Below, piece by piece: positions 29,748-49,700 of a DNA stretch of 64,000 bases. How positions within the stretch are numbered: the first letter of the stretch is position 1; every line of letters starts with the position of its first letter. Both the position numbers and the translations under genes were made by a program. Under the pieces are notes generated by a model. That model saw nothing but the letters and a program-made list of their open reading frames with translations. It searched no databases and had not been told where the DNA came from. Source of the DNA: Mobula hypostoma (Eukaryota); contig NC_086101.1 in assembly GCF_963921235.1 (NCBI RefSeq), positions 12,648,001 through 12,712,000 of the forward strand, written 5' to 3'.

Positions 29748-30453
29748 TTAAGACACGTTTAAACAAAATGTACACGCCTAAGGATTTTAAAGATTTATCA
29801 GTTGTGACTAAACGAAACCGCTCTATCGAAATACTGTATTGGCAATGTGGACAATCTCGCCCTCTGCAAAGATTGAGGGACGAAATTGCAGGTAATGGTC
29901 GGAAATTTTCTGTCTCTAGTTAAGTAATTGCAGCCCATTGTAAATCTGTTACGAATCAATGTAACATAATATGAAAGCGGACCTGGATGAGGACACCAAT
30001 GAATTCAGTAGCCGATTAATTTCGTGCATGCCTGTCCACTATTTATAACATAATAAATATTATAAAATAACATCAAAACCGATATTTTTCAAATTCCATA
30101 ACAAATACGTTTTAAATCATGTCAGGTAAATAAAAATTACTCGGCAAACATGAGTGAATACCTTGCCCCGCTTTTTCTTCCGGTTATCGAGGGAACGGCA
30201 TGATTTGAGGTTCAATGGACCCTAAAGAAAACATTCGCGGGAAAAGCAAATAAAATTAAAGCATTTTGAAAGCATGATTTTTTATCAATTAACTCACTGA
30301 ACTAGTTTTTTAAATAGCATTTGGCCGTCGTGAATTTTCAGAAAATTGCATTGTTTGTCTTTGATCGGGCGCTGTTATTTGACTCCAGGAGTCGATGCTC
30401 GAGTACGTTATTACTCATACTGTAGGTATAGCCGCGTTTTGAACTGGATGGGT

Positions 30454-30469
30454 GGCTCTTAAAAGAGCC
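30454..30469 (-). terminator. Histone mRNA 3' stem-loop (H2B copy 1)
   Basis: Minus strand AAAC-GGCTCTTTTAAGAGCC-ACCCA. Confidence 0.95.
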
Positions 30470-30503
30470 GTTTGGCGATTTAATCGCATCTTTCAAGGGT
30501 AAT

Positions 30504-30914
30504 CTACTTGGAGCTGGTATATTTGGTGACGGCTTTCGTGCCTTCAGAGACGGCGTGTTTAGCCAGTTCCCCAGGAAGCAGAAGACGGACGGCGCTCTGG
30601 ACCTCTCGGGAGGAGATGGTCTGGCGACGGGTGTAATGCACCAGACGGGAAGCCTCGGACGCAATACGCTCAAAGATGTCGCTGACAAATGAGTGGATGA
30701 CACTCATGGCCTTGGAAGAAATACCGGTGTCTGGGTGAACCTGCTTCAGTACTTTGTAGATATAGATGCTGTAGCTCTCCTTCCTGCTCCTCCTGTGCTT
30801 CTTATCGCCTTTCCTGCTCATTTTCATAGCAGTCTTCTTAGAGCCCTTTTTCGAAACGGCGCCTTTACCTCCGCCTGCCGTGACGCTGGTAGTACCCGAA
30901 ACAGTAGTTGGCAT
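30504..30914 (-). CDS. Divergent histone H2B, copy 1 (136 aa)
   Basis: [27 protein letters not shown]...[26 protein letters not shown]; intronless; stem-loop and H2B-type promoter present. Confidence 0.95.
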
Positions 30915-30976
30915 TGTGTAACTCTTGCTGACTTACACACCAAAAATCAAGCAATACGCAATCGCCTGCTTCTCTC

Positions 30977-31050
30977 TTATATATACAGAGCTATGCAAAT
31001 AATCAAAGCACGATGCAAATGAAGGATGGCAGATTGTCCGTTCCGATTGG
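30977..31050 (-). promoter_or_regulatory. H2B promoter: TATA, two octamers, CCAAT
   Basis: Minus strand TATATATAA (30977-30985), ATTTGCAT (30993-31000, 31013-31020), CCAAT (31046-31050). Confidence 0.85.
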
Positions 31051-31912
31051 TTACTTTGTGCAAACCTCTGAACGGACGTGCTCTGGTGTCACTACTTCAC
31101 CCGCCCGATAGCGTTTGCTTTGCAAGAAATTCGGTGTGAAAGAATCTCAGGAGAGAGAGAGAGAAAAATTAAGGTAATGTTTAGGACGAAAATACAACCC
31201 CTGACCATCTTTACAATGAGTTAACATTACAAATAACAGAAATACTAACATTGGGAGATACTAACATTTCTCATGATTGGGGGATGAAAATGTTTTGTTT
31301 AAATCGATGGCCTTTTTCATGAATTGAGAATGTTTGGAGAGAAAATTGGGATAAGATGAGGAATAGTGAGAGGGCTGTGGGTGAGGGGAAAGAAGGGAGC
31401 AAAAAAAGGAGTAGTTAAGTCAAGAGAGATCAAACCAACAAAGGAGTATTTTCAGCATTTTCTGTTTTATTTCAGAATCTAGCAACTGCAATACTTTGTT
31501 TTACGATGAATTTTAATTAAATCTGCGTAATGGAAAGATACGACAGTAATCAATTCACAGTACTTAGACAGAAAATACAACAAAGGACAATATTTAATAA
31601 ATAAAAAATGTACATTGTCTTCTCTGTCTGCTTATCGCCCCGCTGGAGTTGACTACGGATATGGAATTATAAAGCAACGGCCCTTTGGCCAAACATGCCG
31701 ATACTGGCTTGTGATGGTGTGCTGCAATTTGTCATAGATGCTACTTTCCCTGCATTTTTTCCCTCTATTCAAATCCCTTTTGGAAGTTGCAATCAAACTC
31801 AGGTCATTTATCGCCTGAAGAGCCTCAACGTGTCTTATGATTCGGCCAGGTAGCTTCTGTGCAGAGGATACTGATGATGAATTCTGAAGAAGGGACATAT
31901 TGGAAATATTTA

Positions 31913-31991
31913 AAAACGCAAACACGAGGAAATCTGCAGATGCTGGAAATTCAAGCAACACACACACACAGCAGCATTTTGTGTGTGTTGC
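31913..31991. mobile_element. 79-bp Penelope-derived insertion present only in duplication unit 1
   Basis: 13-bp direct repeat TTGGAAATATTTA (31900-31912, 31992-32004); the paralogous site in unit 2 (~34213) is empty. Confidence 0.8.
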
Positions 31992-32810
31992 TTGGAAATA
32001 TTTAGTTAGTTAATCTCCGTCTGCGTCATTAACTCTCTAATCAATACAGACTAAGTGCTCTTTTAGACGGTCCCTGCTAAATTTGTGACAGTTCGCGTCA
32101 CTGCCTCTCCAACCAATACAGTTAAAGTTCTTCAGAAACCCCCTACCAAAATTAATGCAAGCTCAAAATATTGCGAAAGCTGTACTGGCAATATGGGCAA
32201 TCTTGCCCTCTGCAAAGATTGAGAAGGTCGAAATTGCAGGTACTGGTCGGAAATTTTCTTTCTCTAGTTAAGTAATTGCAGCCCATCGTAAATCTGTTAC
32301 GAATCAATGTAACATAATACGACAGCGGACCTGGATGAGGACACCAATGAATTCAGTAGCCGATTAATTTTGTGCATGCCTGTCCACTGCTATTTATAAC
32401 ATAATAAATATTATAAAATAATAAAATCAAAACCGATATTTTTCAAATTCCATACCAACAAATCCGTTTTAAATCATACGTCAGGTAAATAAAAATCACT
32501 CGGCAAACATGAGTGAATACCTTGCCCCGCTTTTTCTTCCGGTTATCGAGGGAACGGCATGATCTAAGTTGAGGTTCAATGGACCCTAAAGAAAACATTC
32601 GCGCGAAAAGCAAGGCATTTTGAAAGCATGCTTTTTATCTATTAACTGACGGAACTACATAGTTTTTAAAATAGCATTTGGCCGTCGTGAATTTTCAGAA
32701 AATTGCATTGTTTGTCTTTGATCGGGCGCTGTTATTTGACTCCAGGAGTCGATGCTCGAGTACGTTATTACTCATACTGTAGGTATAGCCGCTGTTTGGA
32801 CTGAATGAGT

Positions 32811-32826
32811 GGCTCTTAAAAGAGCC
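32811..32826 (-). terminator. Histone mRNA 3' stem-loop (H2B copy 2)
   Basis: GGCTCTTTTAAGAGCC on the minus strand. Confidence 0.95.
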
Positions 32827-32860
32827 GTTTGGCGATCTAATCGCATCTTTCAAGGGTAAG

Positions 32861-33271
32861 CTACTTGGAGCTGGTATATTTGGTGACGGCTTTCGTGCCT
32901 TCAGAGACGGCGTGTTTGGCCAGTTCCCCAGGAAGCAGAAGACGGACGGCGCTCTGGACCTCTCGGGAGGAGATGGTCTGGCGACGGGTGTAATGCGCCA
33001 GACGGGAAGCCTCGGACGCAATACGCTCGAAGATGTCGCTGACAAATGAGTGGATGACACTCATGGCCTTGGAAGAGATACCGGTGTCTGGGTGAACCTG
33101 CTTCAGTACTTTGTAGATATAGATGCTGTAGCTCTCCTTCCTGCTCCTCCTGCGTTTCCTACCGCCTTTCTTGCTCATTTTCATAGCAGTTTTCTTAGAG
33201 CCCTTTTTCAAAACGGCACCTTTACCTCCGACTGCCGTGACGCTGGTAGAACCCGAAACAGCAGTTGGCAT
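32861..33271 (-). CDS. Divergent histone H2B, copy 2 (136 aa)
   Basis: Intact ORF with stem-loop, TATA (33334-33342), distal octamer (33370-33377) and CCAAT (33403-33407); proximal octamer mutated. Confidence 0.95.
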
Positions 33272-34529
33272 TGTGTAACTCTTGCTGACTTACACACCAA
33301 AAATCAAGTAACACGCAATCGGCTGCTTCTCTCTTATATATACAGAGCTATGCAACTAATCAAAGCACGATGCAAATGAAGGATGGCAGATTGTCCGTTC
33401 CGATTGGTTACTTTGTGCAAACCTCTGAATGGACGTGCTCTGGTGTCACTACTTCACCCGCCCGATAGCGTTTGGGAATGCGAGAGCAAGAGAGAGAGGA
33501 AAAAACATTTTAAAATAATGTTTAGGACGAAAATACACCCCCTGACCGTCTTTACAGTAAGCTAACATTACAACTAAAAGAAATACTGACATTGGGAGAT
33601 GAAAACGCTTTGTTTAAATCGATGGCCTTTTACATGAATTGAGAATGTTTGGAGAGAAAACTGGGTTAAGATGAGGAATGGTGAGGGGGCTGTGGGTGAG
33701 GGGAAAGAAGGGAGCAAAAAAGGAGTAGTTAAGTCAGGAGAAATCAAACCAGCAAAAGAATATTTTCAGCATTTTCTGTTTTATTTCAGAATCTAGCAAC
33801 TGTAATACTTTGTTGTACGATGAATTTTAATTAAATCTGCGTAATGGAAAGATACGACAGTAACCAATTCACAGTGCTTAGACAGAAAATACAACAAAGG
33901 ACAATATTTAATAAATAAAAAATGTACATTGTCTTCTCTGTCTGCTTATCGCCCCGCTGGAGTTGACTACGGATATGGAATCATAAAGCAACGGCCCTTT
34001 GGCCAAACATGCCGATACTGGCTTGTGATGGTGTGCTGCAATTTGTCATAGATGCTAGTTTCCCTGCATTTTTTCCCTCTATTCAAATCCCTTTTGGAAG
34101 TTGCAATCAAACTCAGGTCATTTATCGCCTGAAGGGTATCAACGTGTCTTATGATTCGGCCAGGTAGCTTCTGTGCAGAGGACACTGATGATGAATTCTG
34201 AAGAAGGAACATATTGGAAATACTTAGTTAGTTAATCTCCTCCATCTGCGTCATTAACTCTCTAATCAATAGACTAACTGCTGCTTTAGACGATCCCAAC
34301 TAAATTTGTGACAGTTCGCGTCACTGCCTCTCCAACCAATACATTTTTATCAATTAACTCACTGAACTACAAACATCCAGTTTTTAAAATAAAGCATTTG
34401 GCCGTCGTGAATTTTCAGAAAATTGCATTGTTTGTCCTTGATCGGGCGCTGTCGTTTGACTCCAGGAGTCGATGCTTAAATATGTATTACTCATACTGTA
34501 GGTATAGCCGCGTTTTGGACTGGGTGAGT

Positions 34530-34545
34530 GGCTCTTAAAAGAGCC
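34530..34545 (-). terminator. Histone mRNA 3' stem-loop (H2B copy 3)
   Basis: GGCTCTTTTAAGAGCC on the minus strand. Confidence 0.9.
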
Positions 34546-34579
34546 GTTTGGCGATTTAATCGCATCTTTCAAGGGTAAT

Positions 34580-34962
34580 CTACTTGGAGCCTGTATATTT
34601 GGTGATGGTTTTCGTGCCTTCAGAGACGGCGTGTTTAGCCAGTTCCCCAGGAAGCAGAGGGCGGACGGCGCTCTGGACCTCTCGGGAGGAGATGGTCTGG
34701 CGACGGGTGTAATGCACCAGACGGGAAGCCTCGGACGCAATACGCTCGAAGATGTCGCTGACGAATGAAATACCAGTGTCTGGGTGAACCTGCTTCAGCA
34801 CTTTGTAGATATAGATGCTGTAGCTCTCCTTCCTGCTCCTCCTGTGCTTCTTATCGCCTTTCCTGCTCATTTCATAGCAGTTTTCTTAGAGCCCTTTTTC
34901 GAAACGGCGCCTTTACCTCCGCCTGCCGTAACACTGGTAGAACCCGAAACAGCAGTTGGCAT
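34580..34962 (-). pseudogene. Histone H2B pseudogene, copy 3
   Basis: 1-nt deletion near 34870 (frameshift), 9-codon deletion in the histone fold (GIS-FVSD), L>P in VRPLLPG, TATA box deleted. Confidence 0.9.
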
Positions 34963-36333
34963 TGCGTATATCTTGCTGACTTACACACCAAAAATCAAGC
35001 AATACTCAGTCCGCTGCTTCTCTCTACAGAGCTGTGCAAAAATCAAAGCACGATGCAAATGAAGGATGGCAGATTGTCCGTTCCGATTGGTTACTTTGTG
35101 CAAACCTCTGAACGGACGTGCTCTGGTGTCACTACTTCACCCGTCCGGTAGCGTTTGCTTTGCAAGAAATTCGGTGTGAAAGAATCTCAGGAGAGAGGGA
35201 GGGAGAGAAAGAGGGAGAGAGAGAGAGAGAGAGAGGGAGGGAGGGGGAGGGGGAGAGGGAGAGATCACTGCCTCTCTAACCGATACAGTTTAAATCCTTC
35301 AGAAACCCCCTACTAAAATTACTCCAAGCTCAAAATATTGCGAAAGCTGTGACTGGAAACATATCCGAGAATACTGTAAATATTAAAGTTGTTTAGGAAT
35401 ATTCAGGCTTTTCGGTAATCGATCTTAGGGTAATAAAAGTGATGTTGTTAGTAGATCTGCTGCCTCGTAGTTCTAGAGACCCAGGTTCAATCCTGGCCTT
35501 TGGAAATCGATGAGGATTTTATATATTCTTCGCTTCACTGCACGAGATCTCCCCCTCCCCCTCCCCCGGTGATCCTGTTTCCTCCAATGTGCCAAAGACA
35601 TTAGTACATTAATTGGTCACTGGAAATTGCCCTCGTCATAAGTAGTCGAAAGAATTGAAGGGAATTTAGAGCAAAGAGTGGAGAAAATCGTGAGATTGGT
35701 TTAGGATTAGTGTAAATTTGTGCTTGGTGGTTTGCATGAAAATGATGGATTCAAGAATCATCTCAATTTGTGCGACTCCTTAAACTGAACCATTAACGTC
35801 ACCAATTTATTAGGAACACGCACAAAATGCTGGAGGCGGCATCTATGGAAAAGAAGGTACAATACAACGTTTGGACCGAGACCCTTAGCTTCATTTTTAG
35901 AGCCATTTGATTGCCATTTTCATCGTATGAGGTTTGTCCCGTGAAATCTAGGCAGTTTGGGGTTGTACTTCTTAACGCTCAGATGAATGGGAAATAACCA
36001 TATCGAAATATACAATATCTTTCACAGGGTAGATGCTGAGTTATTACTTGTGGGAATCACGAAGTTTTCTGTGGCTGGGCATTTAATAGAGCTACGCACA
36101 ATCTTCAGCACAACGCTTCTCTGAAATCCTGAGGGTGGAGGCCAAATATTTAACTACATAAAGATCAGAATTAATTATAGTGAGCTTGCACAGAATATAG
36201 TGAATGGTGACGTAAGTTTGAGTAAACTGGGCATATTTATTTTGGTTTCGTATATTTTATTGCTTTAAATGTGCTTCTTCCTATAGAAATGTATCTGTAA
36301 CCCACAGGGCAATTTCTGTATGAAAGAGACAGT

Positions 36334-36349
36334 GGCTCTTAAAAGAGCC
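36334..36349 (-). terminator. Histone mRNA 3' stem-loop downstream of the H1 pseudogene
   Basis: AAAAC-GGCTCTTTTAAGAGCC-AC on the minus strand. Confidence 0.95.
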
Positions 36350-36359
36350 GTTTTGGCGT

Positions 36360-37057
36360 TCATTCTTGGATATGTTTCCACTTCGGAGCTTTGCTCTTCT
36401 CGGCCGTGTTGCCGACCATCAGAAGACGGGGCATTTTTAGACACCTCTCTGGCTGTTTACCCTTGGGAACTGTCACCTTGCCGGTTCGTCTTTTATGAGC
36501 GCCGGCCTTGGTTCATAAGCTTTACTCTGCGAAGCGCGTTCTTCCTCCAGGGCTTGCGCACCGCACCCTTAACTTTCGAGGTGGGCGCACCACGTTTTCG
36601 GGTCTGGAAGAACTTACCCGCCGCCCCTTTAACTACCTGGAGCTGCCGGTTGATCTTGAAAGAACCCGAGGCCCCCGTGCCAGCCGTTTGCACCAACATG
36701 CCATCAGCCACCAGGTTCCGAACCGTTTGATTCACCCGTGAATTGATGCGGGGCACATCGTAACCAGTGGCCGACAGCGCCTTCTTGACGGCGAGCAGGG
36801 AGACATCGTGGCGCTGTTTGGACAGCGTCCATGATGTGCCCGGCCACGGTCGACGGACTCCCTTGCCGGGACGTGGGCGAGTTCTTCTTTCGCTTTGCCT
36901 TGCTGCCTCGGGGCTGCTGACCCGCAGCCATTAGCAAAGGTGCGGGTGGCGCATCCGCAGAGCTCACAGACGCCACACCGACGCCCACTGGCTCCGGGCC
37001 GCCACTGAACCCGTCCGGCTGCGGCGGCCTCTTATCAGCCCTCAAAGCGGACGCCAT
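36360..37057 (-). pseudogene. Histone H1 (divergent), frameshifted
   Basis: Winged-helix split across frames: TVAGHIMDAV / KQRHDVSLLAVKKALSATGYDVPRINSRVNQTVRNLVADGMLVQTAGTGASGSFKIN; frameshift near 36820 and a probable second one near 36510. Confidence 0.85.
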
Positions 37058-37239
37058 GTAAACAACTCCACGGTGCCACGTGGCCGAATGTCACGTGCTT
37101 CCGGGAGGTGGGAAGGCCTCACACCCACTGGCACTCCCGGCTGTCTGTGTGTGGCTGCCGTTCATCGCTCAATGAGCAACACCTCATCTTCAGTTTGGAC
37201 ACAGACGAGAAAATCTGCAGATGCTGGAATTCTAAGCAG

Positions 37240-37985
37240 CAGACAGGCCACCAACATCAATGCTACTTCCCATTCCTATTCCGACATGTCAGTCCATGAT
37301 CACCTCCATACTGCCGCTATGAGGCCACGCTCAGGCTGGAGGAGCAACACCTTATATTCCGTCTAGATACCCTTCGACCTGAACATCGATTTCTCGAGCT
37401 TCCGGAAATTGCCCCCCGCCTCACCTTTCCCACAAACAACAGGAATTCTGCAGATGCTGGAAATTCAAGAAACATACATCAAAGTTGCTGGTGAACGCAG
37501 CAGGCTAAGCAGCATCTATAGGAAGAGGCGCAGTCGACGTGACGAAGGGTCTCGGCCTGAAACGTCGACTGCGCCTCTTCCTATAGATGCTGCTTAGCCT
37601 GCTGCGTTCACCAGCAACTTTGATGTATGTCACCTTTCCCACTCCTGTTTCAGTCGCTCATCCTATCTCCTTACCTGCCCACCACCTCCTCTTCGCTTTC
37701 TTCCATGGTCTTTTTACCCTGTCCTATCAGATCCTTCTCCAGCCTTTTATCTCTTTCAGCTGTGAGCTTCCCAGCTCTTTACTTCACCATTCCCCCCTCA
37801 CCTTTCACCTACCATCTTGTACTTCTCCCCTCCCCCGCCCGCCCCAACCTTCTTGTTCAAACTTCTCATCTTTTTTTCCCAGTCCTGATGAGGGGTCTCA
37901 GCCTGGAGCTGTTTACTCTTTTCCACAGATGCTGCCTGGCCCTTTGAGTTTCCCCGGCATTTTGTGTTTGTTGCTTCAGTTTGGA
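37240..37985 (+). mobile_element. Penelope-like 3' fragment containing a nested fold-back mini-element (37434-37629)
   Basis: EATLRLEEQHLIFRL GIY-YIG tail; inner palindrome flanked by the 13-bp TSD TCACCTTTCCCAC (37421-37433, 37630-37642). Confidence 0.8.
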
Positions 37986-38064
37986 CATGCTGCGGGCTCA
38001 GGTTACACTTTCTCTGTAATTTCATAGCTTGCTAATCGTGCTGTAAGATTATCAAAGTATTAAA

Positions 38065-38500
38065 GCAGCACGAGGGATTCTGCAGATGCTGAAAATCCAG
38101 ACCAACACACACACAACGCTGGAGGAACTCAGCAGATGGGGCAGCATCTATGGAGAAGAATAAACAGTCGACATTTAGGGCCAAGACCCTTCTTCAGGGC
38201 TGGAAAGGAACAGGGGAGAGGCCGGAATAAGAAGATGGGTGGAGGGGAAGGAGTACAAGCTAGAAAGCGATAGGTGAAGCAAGGTGGGGGCGGGGTGTGA
38301 AGTAAGAATCTGGGGAGGTAGTAGGTGGAAAAGGTAAAGGGCTGGAGTGGAGAATGGCCCATGGCGAAAGGGAAGGAGGAAGACCACCAAGGGGATGTGA
38401 CAGGTAGACGAGGAGAAGAGGAGAGGTAAGAGGTGTCCAGAGAAAAAGGAAAGGGGAGCGGGAAAATTACCAGAATTTGGAGAAATCGATGTTCGCGTGA
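38065..38500 (-). mobile_element. Penelope-like 3' fragment with degenerate hammerhead
   Basis: Same terminal sequence family; CTGAAGA-AGGGTCTTGGCCC-TAAA-TGTCGACTG on the minus strand. Confidence 0.7.
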
Positions 38501-39600: not shown

Positions 39601-39759
39601 TCATAGTTCATCACCTTTACCTATAATACTCCTGGCATTAAAATAAACAAAGTTCAAACTATCTGCCCCATCGTATCTATCTTTGTTCCTGACTGTTATT
39701 TCCTCCTGGCATTGACATCTACCTTCATCTCCATCGCGCCCCCACTGCCTTTCTCGTCT

Positions 39760-41180
39760 GGTATAACGAGAGGTTGGGCAAATTGGGTTGTTTTCTCTGG
39801 AGTGGCGGAGGCTGAGGGGAGATCTGATCGAGGTTTATAAGATTATGAGAGACACAGATAGACAGAAAATATCCCCCTCCGGGGTTGAAATACCAGAGGG
39901 CATTGCAGTTAAGGTGAGAGGGGATAATTTCAAAGAAGTTCACTGGAATTCAGATGGATGAGCAGTGACCTAATTGAAACCTATCGAATGATGAAAGGCC
40001 TTGATAGAGTGGATGTGGAGAGGATGTTTTCTATAGTGGGAGAATCTAATACCAGAGGACTCTGCCTCAGATCAGAGGTGTGTCCTTTTTTGAACAGAGA
40101 TGAGGAGGAATACCTTTAGCCAGAGAGCAGTGAATCTGAGGAACTTATTGCCACAGGAAGCTGTGGATGCCAAGTCTTTATGTATATTTAAGGCAGAGAT
40201 CGATAGATTGTTGATTGGTCAGGTAATGAAAGGATACGGGGGGCGAGAAGGCAAGATATTGGGGCTGAGAGGAAAATTGGATCAGCCATGATGAAATGGC
40301 ACAGCAGACTCGATGGGCCAAATAGCCTAATTACAGACCAAATTCTCCTGTTCCTTATGGTCTTAAGATGCGAGGGGCACTTTTTTTTCTATAGTGGGCG
40401 AGCGGTGGGTGCCTGGAAAACGCTGCCTGGGGTGGTGGTGAAGGCAGGTACGGTACATTAGGGAATTTTGAAGAGACATTTAGATAGGCAGATGAACGTG
40501 AGGAAAATGGAAGAAAAGATTAGTTTAGTTGGCCATTTGATTACTAACTGAAGGGCCTGTTCCTCTGCTGTACCATTCTACGATCGAAGGGCCCCCCACC
40601 ACCCTCTTCACATTATTACCATCAGGAGGAGACTGAAGACACACACTCAACATCTTAGGAACAGCTTCTTCCCGCCTGCCATCAGATTCCTGAACAGGCG
40701 ATGAACCCATGAAAATAATGCTCAACTTATTTACGTTTTGAATATATACTGTATTTCCTATTATATTTTATAGTATATTTTAAGTATTGCACTGTACTGC
40801 TGCTGCAAAACAACAAATATCCTGATGTACAGTATCTGAGTGATAGTAAACCTGATTCTGATTAGCATCGCAGTTACGATTGTTAAAAAGGTGTTGCGAT
40901 TCTCACTAATTATGTTCGGAACCAGCGGGCAGAGCCTCAGGATGGAAATACATACCTTTAGAACAGAGACGAGGAGGAATTTCTTTCGTTAGTGGGTGGT
41001 GGTTAATTTCCACAGGTGGCTCTGTAGGCCAAGTCACTGGTCATATTTGAAGCAGAGATTGATAGATTCTTGATCAGTGAGGGTGTCAGGCATCACAGAG
41101 AGAAGGAGGAGAATGGGGAATAAAAAATTCTGCCATGATCGAATGGCATAATTCTGCCGTTTTGTCTTATGGTCTTAGTG
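39760..41180 (+). mobile_element. Cluster of nested CR1/L2 3' fragments
   Basis: RRLRGDLIEV-type and 'FSQRAVNLRNLLP' remnants with CR1 3' ends. Confidence 0.7.
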
Positions 41181-44100
41181 AATAGGAATTGGACAGGACA
41201 ATACCTTATAGACAAATTCTGTACATCTGTTTTAAAGAAGAAGCAACTAGATGGCAAATGACCAAAGGTTAAAAAAAACGCTTGATGTTAAGCTTTATTT
41301 ATAGATTTATTTGTGATATTTACATCGAAACATGTGCAGCTGCGGGTAAAAAGGGTCCAGAGGATCATGAGAGACTCCAGCCACCTCAACCACAAACTGT
41401 TGCATCTGGCAAACGGTACCGCAGCATGAAGGCCAGGACACCTTCTATCACCAAGCCATCAGAATTATCAAAGCACAGTGAACTGATTGCGTATCCATCT
41501 GTACATTGTGTCTGACTGTACATACATGAATACGAAACAATCCTAGTGTTGGGCAATACCCTCCCACATTTCTCTTCCCTATTGCTTGTACGTTGTGACA
41601 GAGACACAACATGAAGATTTTTACTCCCTCGTCTTGTGAGACGGATGTAAGAAATAAAATGCTACCGCGTCGCCCTTGGGCCGGGACATCTGAACCCAAA
41701 GCAGACAGATCTTTAGCTGTCACTATAAGTGGAATGAATGCAAGCCTGATGTCCCCCAACAGATTATAAAGCGGTGAGATATCAGAGCATCATCAAGCCA
41801 CTCAACCCATTGAATCTGCTCTAACACTGAATCAACCCATTCTCCTCTCTATCCATGTAACCCTTAACCTCCTTACCAATGAAGGACCCATCAACCTCAG
41901 ACTTTAATAAACCCAACGTCTTCGCCTCTGGAGCCATCAATTCTATGATTCACCACGCTCTGTCTGAAGAAATCCCTGCTAGTTGCAATTCCAAAGGAAA
42001 CTTTTTGATTTTGGGGCTATGCCTTCTGATCCTAGACTTCTAGTAATGGAAACATTCTCTCCTCGTCCAGTCTATCCAGGCCTTTCAGTAATCGATAGAT
42101 TTCAAGGAGACTCCACTCTTCTTCTGAACACCATCCAATACAGGCCCAGGGTCATTAAACACTCCACATAGAACATGTTAAGCTTTTCATTTCCGTTTAC
42201 CTCCTTTGGACCCTCTTCAGGGACAATTCATCCTTCCTTAGAAAAGGGCCCAATTTCTAAAAATCTTATTTAAATGTGCTAACATATGTCATATGTTCAA
42301 AATTTAAAAAAAAACTTTTAAAAGAGACAAGGCACTTTGTCCACATTAAACTTCTAAATACATTTAAAGCAGCGCCAGGTTAGTTTTATTTGATTGAAAC
42401 AGACAACAACTAATTTAAATTAATAAAGCCCCTCATTCTTATATTGGAGAAAATGAAGTATCTGGGGGCGAGATTCGAGCACGGCCAGGCAGCACTTGGA
42501 GAAGGAGCATGCAGTCTCTATGGGCACGGGGTTAGGGGGAAGTTCCGTCAGCAATGGGCCCCCGCAAGCGCTTGAATGTCCTGAAATAGTATTTTTATTT
42601 TAACTAACAGATCTAACTAAGTGTGCGAGATATCACCGACGCTGCGAGGGATCGTTCGATGCGGAGAGCCATGATCACCCAAGCGTGTAACGCGCAGGGC
42701 ACATGAAGAAGAAGATCTTTATTTTAATTTGAAATCGTTGCTAGTTTTGTGACCCCCTATTACTGTATGTATTTTTATAAGTGAATTATCTTTTGTATGT
42801 TTGTAGAAAATACTCGTCTTTGGACCGCTCCGGATGCTCCCACATTCCAAAGACTTACTGCTAGGATTCGTGAGTTGTGGCGCTGGCAGCCTGGCGACAC
42901 TTGCGAGCTGCCCCAGCACAATCCTCGCTGTTATGATTTGACGGAAACGATTGCATTTCACTTTAAGTTTCGACCTACATTTGACAAATCAAGCTTTTTT
43001 TTAAGCTCCGTTCCCGTCTGCCTTTAATGGAGCCGCGATGAACCAACTCGAGCCGCCCGCAAGTTCAATCACGTCAGCGCTGGGGAGACCGATGCTTAAG
43101 TTGTTTATGGTTTTACGGTCGAAAGGCGAAAGCAGTTATGCATCAATGAATGGCTACAGCAAGACGTCACAAAACATCTTCCGTGACAATACACGCCTGA
43201 CGGCTCTGCAATGTGCCGCAGGTATCCAACAACTAAAGCGAATGTGTCAACATAAAGGAGCCTTCCCTGGACTCTGATTTGGACCGTGTCTGTATCGGAT
43301 CTCATCACTAACAAAATTTGACTGCATTCATGATATCCAAGACCAAATCCCGCCATTTTCCAACTCAGGTGGCCTGTTCATAAAAACTGCATCTAATTTC
43401 TCACTAAACGTTGATTATCTATTTCCTTCCGCAGATGCTGCTCAATCGGCGCGGCACTAAAGCAGTTTGTTTTTATTAACCGCCCCCAAGACTCTAGCAT
43501 CCACATCTCTTGTATATCCAGCTCATTTCTTCGTACGAGATACAAAATATTCGGGGACAAAACGCTTTGTTCTAACTTACTCGGTCATAGTGCAGATCAA
43601 ACGAAAGTCTAATGGAAGCAACTTTAATGTATGAATGTGGGTGTCTTCTGGATTTGATGAAACTTATTAACTGTTCGTCTTTCGTTACTGTATCTGCTGT
43701 CTCGTATGTCTCATGGTCTTTCCACGACTACGATTGTTCTTGGCAAATTTTTCTATGGGGGGGGGGAGGAACAGTACGACCACAATTCAGAATCTGCCCA
43801 TCTTATTTTAAATCAGCGACTCTTTCTTACTGGAAGAGTGTAGATGCAGCTGGGCACACACGGGTTAAAAAAAATCAATTTGAGAACAACGCGTCGTGTA
43901 TAATTAAACATGTCTAGAAAATTGTTAAATTCAACATAAACGAATCAGATTAGATTGAAATGCAGTGAAAACTTATGAAATTGTACATTTAATGTTTCAA
44001 CCTGAATCATATGAAGGCAGCAACACGCAAAAAACTGTTGGAGGAACAGGTCCGGCAGCAGCTGTGGAGGAAAATGGACAATGGACGTTTTGGGCCGAGA

Positions 44101-44609
44101 TCCTGATCGGCACGGTCTTGGCGTGAAACGTCGACTCCCCATTTCCCTCTACAGATGAGGCCTATATTGCTGAGTTACTCTAGCGTTTTGTGTGTTGCTC
44201 GAGTTTTCCAGCTTCTGCAGTCTCAAATCTTCATTACAAAGGTTGGTTCCAATTTCGGAAAGGAAAATTTCAGAGTTATTGTGAAGAGCTTTCATGGATT
44301 GAGTTTAAAACCTCTATTGGTTTATTCTTTATTCAATAAAAAATTAAAATCCCTTCAGTTGAAGCATTTCATAATAGTTCTGAATTTTCCTTTCCTTAAT
44401 TTGAACCTACTTTCGTAATGAAGACCCAAGCAGTAAAAGGGAAATTATAGTCACAGGAAACGTGCAGTAGAGATATAATTGGTAAGGTTACTGAGAAGCG
44501 ATAATTAGAAAGTTTGATAATTTATGTCTGCAAAGAGAAGGGAGAGGTGGAGTGAACCTTAATCATTTTTGTTAGGTGTTTCTAAACACAAGTAAACAAC
44601 TATACACGA

Positions 44610-44626
44610 TTTATTTTCTTTTTATT
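44610..44626 (-). terminator. Two AATAAA poly(A) signals downstream of the H1-like ORF
   Basis: TTTATT at 44610-44615 and 44621-44626 on the plus strand, ~80 nt past the stop; no canonical stem-loop nearby. Confidence 0.55.
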
Positions 44627-44703
44627 TGATCAAAAAAATCATTAGCACATATGTCTGTTACGTCAGGTTAACATAATATAAACTGTTTCAGCTCTTGTCT
44701 GAG

Positions 44704-45357
44704 TCATTGTGTTTGGATGGAGTCGGTTTCAGATCCAAATCTGTTGGGTTCGCGCTCTAATGGGCTCTTCGCAGACTTCCTGGGCTTTCTCGAGCCCCGG
44801 CGGCTCGCCAACACTTTCTTCACCCGGATGCCTTTCCAGCGGGTCGACTTTTTCACGGCGCCGTACTTTCTACGGTGCCTGCCCAGTCTCTTCACCCGCT
44901 GGCACCTCTTCCTGCCTGTTGTCCTCAGCCTTCGGGACTTCCTGGCCACCTTGGGGGTGGCTGCCGTCGTTTCCTCCGGACTGTTGCCGAGGCTGGCCGA
45001 GCCCGAGGCGTCACAGCCCACCGTTTGCTCCAGCGGTCCTTTGCTAGGCGGGCTGCGCACAGTTCGACTAACCCGCGAGTTACTGCGGGCCAAGTTATAG
45101 TCGCTGGGCGACAGCGCTTTCTTCATAGCGGCCACCGAGACCCGGCGGCGCTCCCTGGTGGATGCCACCGCCTTCATGATATGCTCGGCCACCGTACAGC
45201 CAAACTTCCTGTGCCGGTACTGCCTCCGCTTCTTTTTCACGGCCGCCGCAATGTCCAGCACCGCTGCCTCGTCGGAAGGAGACGGGACTGCAGGTGGTGG
45301 CGGGGCCGGGGCCGTCGCAGCAGAGACGTCGGTGCCCACCACTTCCGAATCTGCCAT
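44704..45357 (-). CDS. Arginine-rich histone H1-like protein (217 aa)
   Basis: Intact ORF; TVAEHIMKAVASTRERRRVSVAAMKKAL...NSRV...SKGPLEQTVGCDASGS aligns to the H1 globular domain; R/K-rich tail; CpG-rich upstream region. Confidence 0.85.
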   Translation of the reverse strand: MADSEVVGTDVSAATAPAPPPPAVPSPSDEAAVLDIAAAVKKKRRQYRHRKFGCTVAEHIMKAVASTRERRRVSVAAMKKALSPSDYNLARSNSRVSRTVRSPPSKGPLEQTVGCDASGSASLGNSPEETTAATPKVARKSRRLRTTGRKRCQRVKRLGRHRRKYGAVKKSTRWKGIRVKKVLASRRGSRKPRKSAKSPLEREPNRFGSETDSIQTQ

Positions 45358-45434
45358 TCAGTAGCCGCCCACTCGCGTTGCTTCCGCCCCGCAGCTGCGG
45401 CTCCAATGACGGCACCGCCCCGGCGGGGCGGCGG

Positions 45435-45510
45435 TTAAAGCGGCGGCGCGGACGCGGTAGACACAACTGGCCTCCCGGTACCGCCCGAAGCGGCGCGGTT
45501 GTGCTTTTTC
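45435..45510 (-). promoter_or_regulatory. H1-type promoter with variant boxes
   Basis: Order on the minus strand: AAAGCACA (AC/H1-box variant), GGGCGG, CCAGT (CCAAT variant), TTTAA (TATA variant); TGTGTTA further upstream at 45844-45850. Confidence 0.55.
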
Positions 45511-46529
45511 CTCTCCGAAAGTGGCTCGCGTTCAGCTCAAAATCGAGCACTCGGAAAGCCGGGCCTGTAGTATACTTCCCACCCTGCACAATTAGTCGCC
45601 TAAGCCATGATTTGGAGTTTAGAAACGCTCTGGTGTCTTTCCTAACACTCCATCATTGCGCCGTGACACCTCAAAGCAATAGGCTCCTCCCATTTTCCCG
45701 GTTAGAATGTCGCACCTGTTCGATACTTCGTCTCCTGTTAATCCTCAGACTTGCAGAGGAAGAGTTGAGACTCATATTCCACAGGGACCTATTGTTTTAA
45801 CATCGTATGCAACCGGGAAATCTCCTGCTAAGCATAGCCTCAGTAACACACCAACTTTGCGACATGAAAGCTGAGTAAATCGGAGGATCCTGCCGCAACC
45901 AAAGATATTTTGCTGTTTTCATGATAAGACCACCACCCCCAATCAATATTTTACTAATGGACGCCATAAGAGGTCACAACGGCCTGAACTAGGGCGAATC
46001 TCTCAACTCTTGTGATTCCCTCGCGATTGGAGAGTTCCACAACTTAGCTCGGGCATGGCAACTACCCTTTTAACCGAAAAGTCCTAAATTAACCTGATGA
46101 GTTGAAGATTCATTTAAGTCCAATAGCAACTGTGGTGTGGACATTATACGCACAAATCACAGCCTTTCATTCCAATGTTTCTCAAGTTTTCGACAAAGTA
46201 TCCACCTTCATCCCCAGATGGACATGTTGAAAATACCTGTTGCTGTCAGTAAGAACTTCTGAAGCACGTCATCAATACAGCCTTTTCGACGACAGTAGGG
46301 ACACTAGAAACAAAGATGGATCACGCACTTCCGATGAAGGTGGCAACTACTCGGATGGAAAGCAGGCAAGGAGCGGCCGGATTCCAAGTCCATACGCCGA
46401 AAAGTCCAGTGATGATGCCACTATACCACCGGGCGGCATAATTTACAAGGTACGCATGTTAACTCGAACTCAGCTCTTGAAAAAAAAAGACCCTTTCTAC
46501 GAATGGCATTTTTGCCTTATTTGTTATTT

Positions 46530-46775
46530 TAACTACCAAACGCCTTTGCCTAAACTTTAAAGCAGACACAAGCATTGCAATGACTGTTCTGCCTTTGGCA
46601 TGTTCGGTGGAGGTAACTGAACCCCAAAAACATTTTCGAAAAATAAAACTTTCAAGAAACCACGTTTCCTCATATATAAGGTCAGAACTATATCTAATTC
46701 CCTCGCGGCAAGCCAGACGCAGATGAGTAGGTAATTCAACAACTTTACGGTAGCATCTTTGCCTCTTACAGTCAT
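46530..46775 (-). pseudogene. Highly decayed histone H4 pseudogene
   Basis: [48 protein letters not shown] vs H4 [49 protein letters not shown]. Confidence 0.8.
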
Positions 46776-49700
46776 ACAAATAAAGTAACTGAATTCTGCA
46801 AAAAAAAAACACATCACACCGTCTCGATTTGATATCAATCTTCCGGACCTGGTTGAAGAACGTGAACGGCGGGGTGGGGAGGGGGTGTCAAAGGACTCGG
46901 CAACGCTATAGTTCGGAAACATTTGTGGTAAACAAACGACATGCACCTTCAAACAAGAGAAAATCCGCAGATGCCGGTCGACTGTACTTTTTTCCATAGA
47001 TGCTGCCTTGCCTGCTGAGTTCCTCCAGCATTTTGTGTGTGCTGAGTTGCTTTCCAGCTATGATTTGTTTAAGCTCAAAATAATGTTCAAGTAAAACGCG
47101 TAACTTCGTTATTTTTTCCGACTCACTTTGAACGACATCCACTTAACGTTTTTAAATGACTCTCAATAGGAAAATAACGAACCTTAGGGTTTTAGGGATG
47201 AAATTTAACACATCGTGGTTCTGATTTTTATTTATCCCCGTCTATTTTCTGTCCAACAACGCATTCTTCCTCGCTTAAAAATTACATCACGCTAGTTTTT
47301 ACATCTACGATAGCTTTTAAATTCGTTTAACGGGCTGAGAGGATCGTTTGAAATGAAAACAACTGGGCAAATCAATTATTGCTAATGTGGGTTTTGCCTT
47401 GGCAGATTTCTGGCCTTAAAACACGATCTATAACTTTATTTTTCACAGTTCGCTGCACTGTTTAATGCGCAAACCCACCCTTAAATTTAGGAAGATCGAT
47501 ATGACAAATACATTTGTGAAATAAATCACCAGTGAAACACAGAACTGAAATGTAACCACCATTGCTCCTGCACTGCGCTTTTGACATCATGCGATTAGGA
47601 GCTGAGTTAAGGTCAAAGATTAGAATGCAAGGTTAATGTATGAGGCCGGGCTATGAAGGTTAGAAGATGGGGAAATATAATAGCTGGATTTGGAATTAAA
47701 GTTAAGTTAGGCATTGGTTAAAGTTAGTGTTAAGAAGTTATAAAGTTGCAAGCTCCGAAGTCATTAGAATCCTTCAATAAATTAATTAATTAAATGAAAA
47801 TACACTCAAATTAACGGTTTTGTGACCAGATTCCTCAGATTGGAAATAAGATCAAACCTGAATGCACGTACTCTTTATTTTGTGGCGTATGGGTTGTCCA
47901 TCGAAAGGTAACGCCTCTGGTCCAGGGGCCTGCTGTGTCCATTCCGGGGCAGCTCACTCATTTTTGGTCCCCACCGGTCACTCAGCTCTCACCTGAAGCG
48001 TCAAGCACCTGTTTACACCCCGGTATACCGCTTCGACAGGCGAGCTAAACCAGGAGGATATCCGGTGGTCTCGTACCCGGTGAAAAAGTGGCAGACCTCT
48101 CCCAGCTCCGGCGAACTGGGTGGGTAAGATCTACAGTGCGATCCGACGGCCAGGAAAGCGGCACTGCATCGTTTCGTGGAGAACGAAGAGCATGACTAGG
48201 CACAGAAGACGTCATTGTCTTCGACTGCACCCAAGTTTGTGACGCTTCTCGGTACCACAGGACCCAAACTTCAAAGGTCTCAGAAAGGCAGCGTTCATTA
48301 TTAAGGACCTCCAGCACCCAGGGCAGCCCTTTTCTCACTGTTACCATCAGGTAGCAGGTACAGAAGCCTGAAGGCACACACTCAGCGATTCAGGAACAGC
48401 TTCTTCCCCTCTGCGATCCGATTCCTAAATGGACATTGAAGCTTTGGACACTACCTCACTTTTTAAAATATACAGTATTTCTGGTTTTGTACGTTTTAAA
48501 AAATTTATTCAATATACGTAATTGATTTACTTGTTTATTATTTTTTCTCTCTCTGCTAGATTATGTATAGCATTGAACTGCTGCTGCTAAGTTAACAAGT
48601 TTCACGTCGCATGCCGGTGATAACAAACTGATTAAAAACTCTCCCGCACTGGTTTCCTGTCATTGTCGGATATGATGGACTCTTAATTCAACTTCATGCA
48701 TCTGAAGTATTTTATTAATGCGTTGATTAGACAAAACAGTGAAAGGCCATGATTCTCAGAATGGCTACACATATCGTCTCGTAATTTTACAGCTTGTACT
48801 GCAAAAACCACTATAATTCTAAAGTGGTTCACGGTGAAGGGTCTTCACTGTTTATTTATTTCCATAGTTGCTGCCTTACCTGCTGAGTTCCGCCAGCACT
48901 TTGTGCACGTTGCCCACAGTTAAAAGATCGTTTGGCTAGTTTCTGAAGAATATTTCCTGAGCCAAGAATGGAATAAAAGTTGTTTAAAACCTATAGGTTT
49001 AGACAGATTTATTTTATGTGTTTGTTGTTACGATCAAATCTAAACTTCCGGTTGATAGGCATTCCCAGGCTAAACTATGGTGTTTCAACATTGCAGAGAT
49101 AAATTTGAGATTTCAAATAAAAAGCCAATTGTGCCCAAGCAACATTCTAAATTCAGTCGGACTAAAGGTACTGGAATTGGGTTACCGGTTTTCCGTCTAT
49201 TTAAATAAAAATTCTGGAAAGAAGACTTGTTACAGAATTAGATGCACCGTAGCTTCAACAAAATAAAAAGACAAGGCGCGGAAGGACGCCAAATAATAAA
49301 CTAACACGTGCCAATGAATTATTGATTATTTTTGCTGTTTCTGTATTGTGTTAAACCTAGACCATTTTCCAATGAGGTCTTAATGCAAACCACCTTTTGT
49401 TTTCTCCGATTAGTCCGGTGTGTCGCTGTGAGTATTGCAGAGGATCGTCATCGGTGTGCTTTAAGCCCATTGGTTAAAATGCTGTCTTGTGATTGGCTGT
49501 AACCCGAGGGTATATTTTCAATCCCTCTATGCAAATGAGGGTTGCGGTTTTATTACAAACGGTTTTTGTCGGTCGTTGGCCAGTATGAATTCACAAACCT
49601 GGCCATGAGATCAAATGAAATCGTCAAAGCGCTCAGCCATTTGAATGACCTTAAATGACATTACTATATCCTAAATACTGGTTACTAGGACAATTTCAAA

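What the first reader, a model, noticed from the sequence alone, without database searches (positions are those of the whole stretch)
30450..46800. A histone cluster made only of divergent variants: candidate germ-line/sperm chromatin module
Seen: all six recognisable histone loci lie on the minus strand and none is canonical (2 intact divergent H2B, H2B pseudogene, frameshifted divergent H1, intact Arg-rich H1-like gene, H4 relic). No intact H2A, H3 or H4 is present. Known: replication-dependent clusters are normally homogenised and carry all core histones, while fast-evolving H2B and H1 variants are typically testis- or oocyte-specific. Inference: this is a specialised variant satellite cluster undergoing birth-and-death evolution, possibly an undescribed elasmobranch spermatogenic histone set.
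Basis: partly seen in the sequence, partly recalled or inferred. Interest (0 to 1): 0.8.

Follow-up and report, generated by a model that had tools for sequence, protein, structure and literature searches.

The report
Ancient shark-and-ray variant histone cluster
This stretch of a ray genome is one arm of a second histone gene cluster, shared by sharks, rays and chimaeras, that encodes its own versions of the chromatin proteins. One is an arginine-rich linker histone made from a polyadenylated mRNA. Some copies are decaying here, and the tissue that uses the set is still unknown.

Summary
All six histone loci lie on the minus strand and none is canonical:
- two intact H2B variants
- one dead H2B copy
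- a frameshifted H1
- an intact Arg-rich H1-like gene
- an H4 relic

"No intact H2A, H3 or H4" is true only inside the window. An intact H2A and an intact H3, both mildly divergent, lie 6.6 and 8.6 kb past its end on the opposite strand.

This is not a decaying cluster edge. The gene order H4, H1-like, H1, H2B-variant recurs intact in two sharks. A chimaera scaffold carries H3, H2A, H1-like, H1, H4 and H2B together. The cluster copies share diagnostic changes: H4 A69S, H3 Q125H and an H2A tail ending PSKVYA.

The H2B variant is under strong purifying selection (omega 0.05-0.13). It keeps the H2B octamer/TATA promoter and the 3' stem-loop, and it is not orthologous to mammalian TH2B.

The H1-like gene has no stem-loop in any lineage examined. 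It evolves fast (omega 0.35-0.6). Transcriptome-like public runs hold exact contigs confined to the gene, ending 17-22 nt after AATAAA. Its winged helix is eroding in stingrays.

Birth-and-death evolution is shown. A germ-line or sperm role remains plausible (about 50%) but untested, because tissue labels were unavailable.

The parts
30504..30914 (-). H2Bv1: intact H2B variant CDS (136 aa) with a Ser/Thr-rich N-terminal extension of about 12 residues
   Evidence: ORF. Pfam Histone 76.6 bits. Full-length orthologues in 8 elasmobranchs. omega 0.045-0.07 against Pristis and Heptranchias.
30430..30474 (-). Histone 3' stem-loop of H2Bv1, 35 nt after the stop codon
   Evidence: Rfam RF00032, 34.1 bits, at the gathering score. 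Core stem-loop sequence located.
30915..31055 (-). H2Bv1 promoter: CCAAT at -136, H2B octamer ATTTGCAT at -106 and -86, TATA at -71
   Evidence: Motif scan and three-copy alignment.
32861..33271 (-). H2Bv2: intact H2B variant CDS (136 aa), 93% identical to v1. It is the closest copy to the Mobula birostris protein.
   Evidence: Tree: v2 groups with Mobula, support 99/94.
32787..32831 (-). Histone 3' stem-loop of H2Bv2
   Evidence: Rfam RF00032, 34.8 bits.
34580..34962 (-). psi-H2Bv: dead third copy of the tandem repeat
   Evidence: 7-bp TATA deletion, 1-bp frameshift deletion and 27-bp histone-fold deletion. tblastn 82% identity to residues 22-136.
34506..34550 (-). Stem-loop retained behind psi-H2Bv
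   Evidence: Rfam RF00032, 34.1 bits.
30278..35204 (-). Tandem array of three H2Bv repeat units, about 2.36 kb each (the third is shortened)
   Evidence: the repeat finder families D1-D8, spacings 2357 and about 1690-1719 bp, 88-98% identity.
36493..37057 (-). psi-H1: frameshifted linker histone. It is the syntenic counterpart of the intact Arg-rich 231-aa H1 of Heptranchias.
   Evidence: Pfam Linker_histone 38.3 bits on the 3' piece. Three-frame read and tblastn show a frame change inside globular-domain helix 1 and stops in the tail. Synteny.
36310..36354 (-). Stem-loop behind psi-H1
   Evidence: Rfam RF00032, 36 bits.
44704..45357 (-). H1-like variant CDS (217 aa): Pro-rich N-terminus, conserved basic motif plus globular-domain helices 1-2, eroded helix 3 and wing, Arg-rich tail with a conserved Trp motif. 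Single copy in the genome.
44605..44703 (-). 3' UTR of the H1-like gene with two AATAAA signals (44627-44622 and 44614-44609) and no stem-loop. Contigs end at 44605.
   Evidence: No RF00032 match even at E<=10. Sequence read. Exact contigs ending at 44605 in two runs. 3' UTR conserved in skate and sawfish.
46537..46731 (-). H4 relic. It is the syntenic counterpart of the intact cluster H4 of sharks and the chimaera.
   Evidence: tblastn 47% identity to H4 residues 33-98 with one gap; no N-terminal part. Synteny.

Best explanation
The window holds the minus-strand arm of an old second histone gene cluster found throughout cartilaginous fishes. The cluster carries its own version of every histone class:
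- an H2B with a Ser/Thr-rich N-terminal extension
- several Arg-rich H1s
- an H4 with A69S
- H3s with Q125H
- an H2A ending in PSKVYA

Shown: the set is conserved in gene order from chimaera to sharks to rays. The H2B variant is under strong purifying selection. It retains normal replication-type control (CCAAT, octamer and TATA promoter, plus the 3' stem-loop), so it is presumably made in S phase and processed through the stem-loop-binding-protein pathway.

Shown: one linker-histone member, the H1-like gene, has no stem-loop in any lineage examined. A degenerate stem-loop survives in its 3' UTR in a sevengill shark. It carries conserved AATAAA signals and appears as gene-confined, exact contigs in transcriptome-like runs. 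It is therefore a replication-independent, polyadenylated H1 variant.

Shown: in this ray lineage the cluster is turning over. H2Bv was triplicated and one copy died. One H1 and the H4 died. The winged helix of the H1-like protein is eroding while its Arg-rich tail persists.

Inferred: the set packages chromatin in a specialised cell population, most probably the germ line. There the variant nucleosomes and Arg-rich linkers would replace bulk histones, by analogy with mammalian TH2B/TH2A/H1t and with spermatid H1s.
For: Synteny:
- Heptranchias has H4, H1-like, H1 and H2Bv in that order on one strand, all intact.
- Heterodontus has H4, H1-like and H1.
- Pristis has H1-like then H2Bv.
- Hypanus has H2A on the opposite strand, then H1-like and two H2B.
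- Callorhinchus has H3, H3 and H2A on one strand, and H1-like, H1, H4, H1, H2B, H2B on the other.

Shared diagnostic substitutions: H4 A69S, H3 Q125H, and the H2A PSKVYA tail found only in chondrichthyan hits.

H2Bv:
- Full-length orthologues in 8 elasmobranchs.
- A single clade in the ML tree, 84/92 support and 100% of bootstrap trees.
- omega 0.045-0.13; 0.02-0.09 in the histone fold.
- Present only at this locus in the genome.
- Promoter and stem-loop intact.

H1-like:
- 11 elasmobranch orthologues with a strictly conserved motif.
- A Callorhinchus counterpart that shares the globular-domain motif, the tail Trp motif, the synteny and the lack of a stem-loop.
- omega 0.35-0.6.
- R/(K+R) 0.45-0.64 against 0.11 in canonical H1.
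- No stem-loop in four lineages, while neighbouring genes have one.
- A relic stem-loop in the Heptranchias 3' UTR and a conserved double AATAAA.
- Exact contigs at 44605-45336, 44624-45338 and 44605-45089, with empty unique flanks, in four runs of two species.

Language-model search: the nearest cluster is 'spermatid-specific linker histone H1 family', score 0.94 with 205/256 shared features. This is a lead only.
Against: - No tissue information. Run identities were coded and their RNA status is only a guess by the tool.
- The H1-like gene was held by at least four samples of one species and several of another. If those are different tissues, that argues for broad rather than germ-line-restricted expression.
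- No listed run was shown to hold H2Bv1; the three runs listed hold next to none of its words (0.00). This could mean silence in those samples or loss of non-polyadenylated mRNA.
- H2Bv has an entirely ordinary S-phase-type promoter and 3' end.
- In this species the H1-like gene may be under relaxed constraint. Against a close relative there are 3 synonymous and 8 non-synonymous codon changes. The Pfam globular-domain score falls from 61-68 bits to 27. AlphaFold predicts no helix 3, although both models are of low confidence.
- From memory, not checked here: elasmobranch sperm are reported to use true protamines, so these proteins would not be the final sperm packaging.
Confidence: 0.6

Rival explanations
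1. It is a maternal or early-embryonic histone set, like the sea-urchin cleavage-stage histones or the Xenopus, zebrafish and mammalian oocyte H1. The variant genes would supply oocytes and cleavage-stage embryos. The polyadenylated H1-like mRNA would be stored maternally.
For: - There is a complete alternative set of all five histone classes in one cluster.
- The H1-like gene has poly(A) instead of a stem-loop, as expected of stored maternal histone mRNAs (general knowledge).
- Automatic names such as 'late histone H2B.L4-like' and 'H2B, gonadal-like' appear in relatives. These carry little weight.
Against: - Known oocyte H1s are not notably Arg-rich (from memory).
- The language-model neighbours are spermatid and testis H1 clusters, not oocyte H1.
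- No embryo or ovary data were available.
Confidence: 0.2
2. It is a minor somatic histone cluster with no cell-type specialisation. These would be old paralogues retained by dosage or drift, expressed wherever cells divide. The H1-like gene would be a replacement-type H1 of differentiated cells, analogous to H1.0 or H1.10.
For: - H2Bv keeps the canonical S-phase promoter and stem-loop.
- H2A and H3 in the cluster differ little from canonical.
- The H1-like gene is detected in several samples of two species.
Against: - Diagnostic substitutions in every class have been conserved since the chimaera-elasmobranch split. omega of 0.05-0.13 is hard to explain without a distinct function.
- All cluster H1s are Arg-rich.
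- Repeated loss of members in rays fits a dispensable specialised role better than a housekeeping one.
Confidence: 0.15
3. It is the decaying edge of a replication-dependent cluster. The intact ORFs would be recent survivors without function.
For: - Three of six loci in the window are dead.
- The H1-like globular domain is eroding, and its recent non-synonymous to synonymous ratio is close to neutral expectation.
Against: - Intact syntenic orthologues exist from chimaera to rays.
- omega is 0.05-0.13 for H2Bv and 0.35-0.6 for the H1-like gene.
- The 3' UTR and promoter elements are conserved.
- Gene-confined transcript-like contigs are present.
Confidence: 0.04

Closest known systems
Mammalian cluster-resident germ-line histones: H2B.1 (TH2B), H2A.1 (TH2A), H1t (H1.6)
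   Same: - Intronless genes inside a histone cluster.
- H2B.1 has a histone fold almost identical to canonical and a divergent N-tail. It keeps a 3' stem-loop, is 85% identical to canonical H2B, and duplicates and dies locally (PMC8857922).
- H2Bv is 78-80% identical to canonical, has a Ser/Thr-rich tail, a stem-loop, and local duplication with a pseudogene.
   Different: - Independent origin. The ML tree places H2Bv inside chondrichthyan H2Bs and primate TH2B elsewhere. Raman et al. date H2B.1 to mammals.
- H2Bv has an N-terminal extension of about 12 residues.
- The tissue of expression is unknown.
Polyadenylated germ-line H1 variants of mammals: HILS1 (H1.9), H1T2 (H1.7), H1oo (H1.8)
   Same: - A replication-independent H1 with poly(A) and no stem-loop.
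- Raised arginine content and fast evolution.
- The language-model nearest cluster is 'spermatid-specific linker histone H1'.
   Different: - No sequence-level orthology. The HMM search finds only generic H1s outside Chondrichthyes.
- The shark and ray gene still sits inside the histone cluster, and its globular domain is clearly of the replication-dependent H1 type.
- The mammalian genes are solitary (general knowledge).
Protamine-like (PL-I) sperm nuclear basic proteins derived from H1
   Same: An H1 winged-helix core joined to an Arg-rich tail. In this ray the globular domain is eroding while the basic tail remains.
   Different: - Only 24% basic residues, with R/(K+R) of about 0.6. This is far from protamine composition.
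- Presence in sperm is untested.
- Elasmobranch sperm are reported to use true protamines (from memory).
Sea-urchin stage-specific histone gene sets (cleavage-stage, early, late, sperm-specific H1 and H2B)
   Same: A whole alternative complement of histone classes encoded apart from the bulk genes, and an H2B with an extended N-tail.
   Different: - No SPKK-type repeats.
- Most members keep stem-loops.
- This is a vertebrate, lineage-specific set.
H2B.K and H2B.N of bony vertebrates
   Same: Old vertebrate H2B variants with a near-canonical fold.
   Different: H2B.K and H2B.N contain an intron and use poly(A) signals (PMC8857922). H2Bv is intronless and has a stem-loop.

Membership tests
Core histone H2B (replication-dependent gene type) | Histone-fold protein of H2B type | tested here: met
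   Pfam PF00125 at 76.6 and 75.9 bits. 78-80% identity to canonical H2B.
Core histone H2B (replication-dependent gene type) | Intronless gene ending in the conserved 3' stem-loop (RF00032) | tested here: met
   Rfam 34.1-34.8 bits, at or above the gathering score, 35 nt after the stop.
Core histone H2B (replication-dependent gene type) | H2B-specific octamer (ATTTGCAT) upstream of the TATA box | tested here: met
   Octamer at -106 (and -86 in v1), TATA at -71, CCAAT at -136.
Core histone H2B (replication-dependent gene type) | Member of the homogenised multi-copy bulk family | tested here: not met
   Only this locus carries it. About 60 other H2B genes are 80% identical or less and lack the first 19 or so residues. 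It forms a separate clade.
H2B.1 / TH2B | Orthology to mammalian H2B.1 by phylogeny | tested here: not met
   ML tree: TH2B (96/99) is separate from the H2Bv clade, which nests among chondrichthyan H2Bs.
H2B.1 / TH2B | Expression in testis and oocytes | not testable with these tools
   Run tissues were coded. No listed run was shown to hold H2Bv1; the three runs listed hold next to none of its words.
Linker histone H1/H5 | Winged-helix globular domain (PF00538) | tested here: met
   27.1 bits against a cut-off of 22.4 for the window protein, and 61-68 bits in Pristis, Leucoraja, Heptranchias and Callorhinchus. Helix 3 and the wing are eroded here. The AlphaFold models are of low confidence.
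Linker histone H1/H5 | Lys-rich C-terminal tail | tested here: not met
   R/(K+R) is 0.60, against 0.11 in this genome's canonical H1.
Replication-dependent H1 | 3' stem-loop | tested here: not met
   No RF00032 match at E<=10, and none in three other lineages. AATAAA signals and contig ends point to poly(A).
Protamine-like (PL-I) sperm protein | H1-type globular core plus Arg-rich basic tails | tested here: inconclusive
   Core and Arg enrichment are present, but the protein is only 24% basic.
Protamine-like (PL-I) sperm protein | Protein present in spermatid or sperm nuclei | not testable with these tools
   Needs proteomics of testis or sperm basic proteins.

The most novel reading that the evidence does not exclude
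Cartilaginous fishes have kept a complete co-located alternative chromatin kit since before the chimaera-elasmobranch split, roughly 400 My ago. Variant H2A, H2B, H3 and H4 each carry a diagnostic substitution, and they sit beside several Arg-rich H1s. The kit would be deployed in spermatogenic cells as the step between bulk histones and protamines. Its polyadenylated Arg-rich H1-like member, whose winged helix is now dissolving in stingrays, would be a living vertebrate intermediate on the H1-to-protamine-like path. A conserved H4 variant (A69S) would itself be unusual, since H4 variants are very rare.
Probability: 0.2. Interest if true: 0.7.

Novelty: new member of a known kind. Interest (0 to 1): 0.45.

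Why it matters
Lineage-specific, fast-turning-over histone variants are well documented in mammals, insects and echinoderms. For cartilaginous fishes no description was found in the searchable literature.

Here an entire second histone complement can be traced by synteny and shared substitutions from chimaera to rays. It includes a clean example of a histone gene that switched from stem-loop to poly(A) processing and left a relic stem-loop in one shark. It also shows a gradient of winged-helix erosion across ray lineages.

This gives comparative chromatin biology a deep-branching vertebrate reference point. It also offers concrete candidates for testis, ovary and embryo expression studies and for proteomics.

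The practical value is modest. The genes are already predicted in RefSeq annotations, and the functional claim is still open.

Tried and rejected
- **Orthology of H2Bv to mammalian TH2B.** Suggested by automatic names and a similar tail motif. Rejected by the ML tree and by the mammalian origin of H2B.1 (PMC8857922).
- **Identity with H2B.K or H2B.N.** Rejected: those genes have an intron and poly(A), while H2Bv is intronless with a stem-loop.
- **'Decaying cluster edge'.** Rejected by orthologue conservation and omega.
- **RNA evidence for H2Bv1.** None of the runs listed was shown to hold it. This is uninformative, because stem-loop mRNAs are lost from poly(A)+ libraries.
- **Leucoraja Logan contigs carrying the H1-like gene.** They are collinear with the genome and bounded by repeats, so they are genomic and give no expression evidence.
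- **Homologue search with the neighbouring H2A.** Low yield, because it is 90-96% identical to many canonical H2As. Only the PSKVYA tail is diagnostic.
- **AlphaFold models of the window and Pristis H1-like proteins.** Both have mean pLDDT of about 54. The loss of predicted helix 3 in the window protein is only weak support for erosion.
- **Literature searches on elasmobranch, chimaera or catshark histone variants and sperm basic proteins.** Nothing relevant was found.
- **Rfam at a permissive threshold around the H1-like gene.** Only chance hits.

Full report
**Observation**

The window is G000:C12:12648001-12712000.

- The two intact H2B ORFs (30504-30914 and 32861-33271, 136 aa each) score 76.6 and 75.9 bits against Pfam Histone.
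- Together with a third copy they lie in a tandem repeat of about 2.36 kb.
- The third copy (34580-34962) is dead. It has a 7-bp deletion that removes the TATA box, a 1-bp frameshift deletion and a 27-bp deletion in the fold.
- The H1 at 36493-37057 changes frame inside helix 1 of its globular domain. Stops truncate its tail.
- The 217-aa ORF at 44704-45357 is a weak but significant linker-histone match (27.1 bits, cut-off 22.4). Arg dominates Lys: R/(K+R) is 0.60, against 0.11 in this genome's canonical H1.
- An H4 relic lies at 46537-46731, 47% identical to H4 residues 33-98.
- A tblastn map of 154 kb found nothing else histone-like inside the window.

**What the window edge hid**

Genome-wide Pfam scans and fetched flanks show that the cluster continues on the plus strand just past the window end. 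The following positions are offsets beyond the window end:

- a dead H2B at +0.5 kb
- an intact H2A at +6.6 kb, with a 43.6-bit stem-loop
- an intact H3 at +8.6 kb, with five substitutions
- a degenerate Arg-tailed H1-like ORF at +12.3 kb
- two more divergent H1 genes at +31 and +33.5 kb

More variant H1, H2A, H3 and H2B genes lie at 13.48-13.49 Mb and 16.42 Mb of the same chromosome. The bulk canonical arrays are on other contigs: C22, C45, C80, C82 and C83. So 'no intact H2A/H3' is true of the window only. No intact H4 was found in the 154 kb.

**Regulatory anatomy**

Four genes carry the histone 3' stem-loop at or above Rfam's gathering score: H2Bv1, H2Bv2, psi-H2Bv and psi-H1. The H2Bv promoters have CCAAT at -136, the H2B octamer ATTTGCAT at -106 (plus -86 in v1) and TATA at -71. 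This is the standard replication-type H2B design.

The H1-like gene has no stem-loop even at E<=10. It has two AATAAA signals 78 and 89 nt after the stop and a GC-rich promoter without TATA.

**Relatives and synteny**

Full-length H2Bv orthologues (135-140 aa, same extended Ser/Thr-rich N-tail) exist in Mobula birostris, Pristis, Leucoraja, Narcine, Hemitrygon, Heptranchias, Pristiophorus and Rhincodon.

In an ML tree they form one clade (84/92; 100% of bootstrap trees). This clade nests among chondrichthyan H2Bs, with a Callorhinchus H2B as weakly supported sister. Primate TH2B branches elsewhere. The names 'H2B type 1-A-like' given by automatic annotation therefore do not reflect orthology. 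Raman et al. date H2B.1 to mammals and describe H2B.K and H2B.N as intron-containing (PMC8857922).

The H1-like protein has orthologues in 11 elasmobranchs only. They share a strictly conserved basic motif and helices 1-2 of the globular domain. An exhaustive profile search drops sharply after these. The next real relative is a Callorhinchus H1 that shares the globular-domain motif and a Trp-containing tail motif.

Gene order is conserved:

| Species | Arrangement |
|---|---|
| Heptranchias | H4, H1-like, H1 (231 aa, Arg-rich), H2Bv on one strand, all intact |
| Heterodontus | H4, H1-like, H1 |
| Pristis | H1-like, H2Bv |
| Hypanus | H2A on the opposite strand, then H1-like, two H2B |
| Callorhinchus | H3, H3, H2A on one strand; H1-like, H1, H4, H1, H2B, H2B on the other |

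This matches the window plus its right flank. The cluster copies share diagnostic changes across the chimaera-elasmobranch divide:

- H4 A69S, in Heptranchias and Callorhinchus
- H3 Q125H, in this genome's C12 H3s and both Callorhinchus H3s
- an H2A tail ending PSKVYA, seen among the 120 best H2A hits only in chondrichthyans

The cluster is thus an ancient paralogous histone complement. The 400-My scale is general knowledge of chondrichthyan divergence and was not computed here.

**Selection**

Nei-Gojobori estimates for H2Bv against Pristis and Heptranchias give omega 0.045-0.13. The histone fold is at 0.02-0.09 and the tail at 0.12-0.19. The two local paralogues differ by 6 synonymous and 9 non-synonymous changes, most of them in the tail.

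The H1-like gene evolves much faster: omega is 0.35-0.6 overall, 0.33-0.61 in the globular domain and 0.36-0.82 in the tail.

**Expression**

Four runs of one species hold 80-92% of the sampled words of the H1-like stretch, and runs of a second species hold 31-44%. For the H2Bv1 stretch no holder was found; the three runs of that species listed there (X1 among them) hold next to none of its words (0.00).

The tool labels these runs as RNA only by guess. Laid on 42001-48000, they give single exact contigs over the gene: 44605-45336, 44624-45338 and 44605-45089. Unique flanking stretches (43001-43400, 43801-44000, 44401-44600, 47201-47800) are empty in all four runs. Two contigs end at 44605, which is 17-22 nt after the first AATAAA.

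With only 85-170 Mb of contigs per run against a 3.5-Gb genome, this pattern fits mRNA far better than DNA. Tissue labels were not available. The lack of H2Bv1 in the listed runs is uninformative, because stem-loop mRNAs are lost from poly(A)+ libraries.

**History of the poly(A) switch**

In Heptranchias, Pristis and Callorhinchus the neighbouring cluster genes carry stem-loops but the H1-like gene does not. In Heptranchias its 3' UTR still holds a degenerate stem-loop 25 nt after the stop. The 6-bp stem is intact and the loop is altered. An AATAAA follows. The double-AATAAA 3' UTR is conserved between ray, skate and sawfish.

**Erosion in stingrays**

Pfam globular-domain scores are 67.9 (Callorhinchus), 61.8 (Pristis), 61.9 (Leucoraja), 61.3 (Heptranchias), 37.5 (Hypanus) and 27.1 (window). 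The changes, including Leu to Pro, cluster in helix 3 and the wing.

Against the contig of a closely related species there are 3 synonymous and 8 non-synonymous codon changes. All the non-synonymous ones fall in the wing and tail, and the ORF is intact in both species.

AlphaFold predicts helices 1-2 but no helix 3 for the window protein. It predicts three helices for Pristis using the same alignment. Both models are of low confidence, with mean pLDDT about 54. In this species the protein is either shifting towards a tail-driven, protamine-like mode of DNA binding or drifting under relaxed constraint. The data do not decide between these.

**Function**

- Shown: an old, conserved, partly expressed variant complement with birth-and-death turnover.
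- Inferred: use in a specialised cell type.

Points for the germ line:

- Every H1 in the cluster is Arg-rich. In animals this is characteristic of spermatid and sperm H1 derivatives.
- The language-model neighbours are 'spermatid-specific linker histone H1' and 'testis-specific H1 histone' clusters (a lead only).
- There is an analogy with the cluster-resident TH2B, TH2A and H1t.
- Evolution is fast and members are lost repeatedly.

Points against:

- There are no tissue data.
- The H1-like gene is detected in several samples.
- H2Bv has ordinary S-phase control.

My estimates: germ-line bias about 50-55% (testis more likely than oocyte or embryo), a non-specialised somatic role about 15%, and pure decay under 5%.

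**Novelty**

The genes are predicted in RefSeq for related species. No paper describing a chondrichthyan variant histone cluster was found, though the library lacks most subscription journals. I class this as new members of a known kind: lineage-specific histone variants. The comparative story is tidy but the function is unproven.

Noticed in passing
L001:6604-6993 (+) and L001:8607-9017 (+), i.e. 6.6 and 8.6 kb beyond the window end: An intact H2A variant whose tail ends PSKVYA, with a 43.6-bit stem-loop at L001:7016-7061. Also an intact H3 with S86I, M90V, A95G, I119V and Q125H (mature numbering). Q125H and the H2A tail are shared with the Callorhinchus cluster copies.
   Followed up: partly
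L009:5487-5798 (Heptranchias) and L020:14156-14467 (Callorhinchus): The H4 genes inside the variant cluster both carry A69S; Heptranchias also has V65I. A conserved H4 variant would be unusual. In the window species this H4 has decayed to a relic.
   Followed up: partly
L002:2335-2871 (-), L005:8591-9244 (+), L015:2890-3582 (+): Further H1-derived ORFs on the same chromosome have almost no detectable winged helix (Pfam 14 bits or none) and basic tails. One has ARKRAAA-type repeats. They may be a series of collapsing H1 derivatives.
   Followed up: partly
L014:3594-4703 (-), L016:9211-9588 (+), L016:3378-3788 (+), L017:5318-5728 (-): More variant histone genes lie 0.8 and 3.7 Mb further along the same chromosome. 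They are an Arg-tailed H1, a very divergent 125-aa H2B, and two H3 variants with Q125H or Q125Y.
   Followed up: no
window 45323-45712 and 45992-46686: Low-depth exact contigs lie upstream of the H1-like gene and over the H4 relic in runs X1 and X2. They could be a long 5' UTR, upstream transcription, or a trace of DNA in the libraries.
   Followed up: no
window 46977-47044, also 42600-42720 and 43600-43800: Short repeat fragments reach very high summed depth in all four runs (up to 10^5), with many loose ends. These are highly expressed or very abundant interspersed repeats.
   Followed up: no
window 24837-25625 (+): A 262-aa ORF with several hydrophobic segments lies just upstream of the histone array. 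Another first-stage note calls it a CALHM-like channel. It was not examined here.
   Followed up: no
window about 26280-26470: A run of N (assembly gap or masked stretch) sits inside a long TC/AG-type simple repeat.
   Followed up: no
L006:2466-3437 (+), about 7 kb before the window start: An intronless ORF of 323 aa looks like the middle part of an Hsp70/Hsc70 protein. It is probably a retro-copy or a fragment.
   Followed up: no
L001:2035-3955: A (TG/CA)n microsatellite of about 1.9 kb lies between the dead plus-strand H2B and the H2A variant.
   Followed up: no
L008:7411-7457 (Pristis): A weak orphan histone stem-loop (25.4 bits) lies 2.5 kb upstream of the Pristis H1-like gene, where sharks have the cluster H4. 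It may be the trace of an H4 lost in sawfish too.
   Followed up: no
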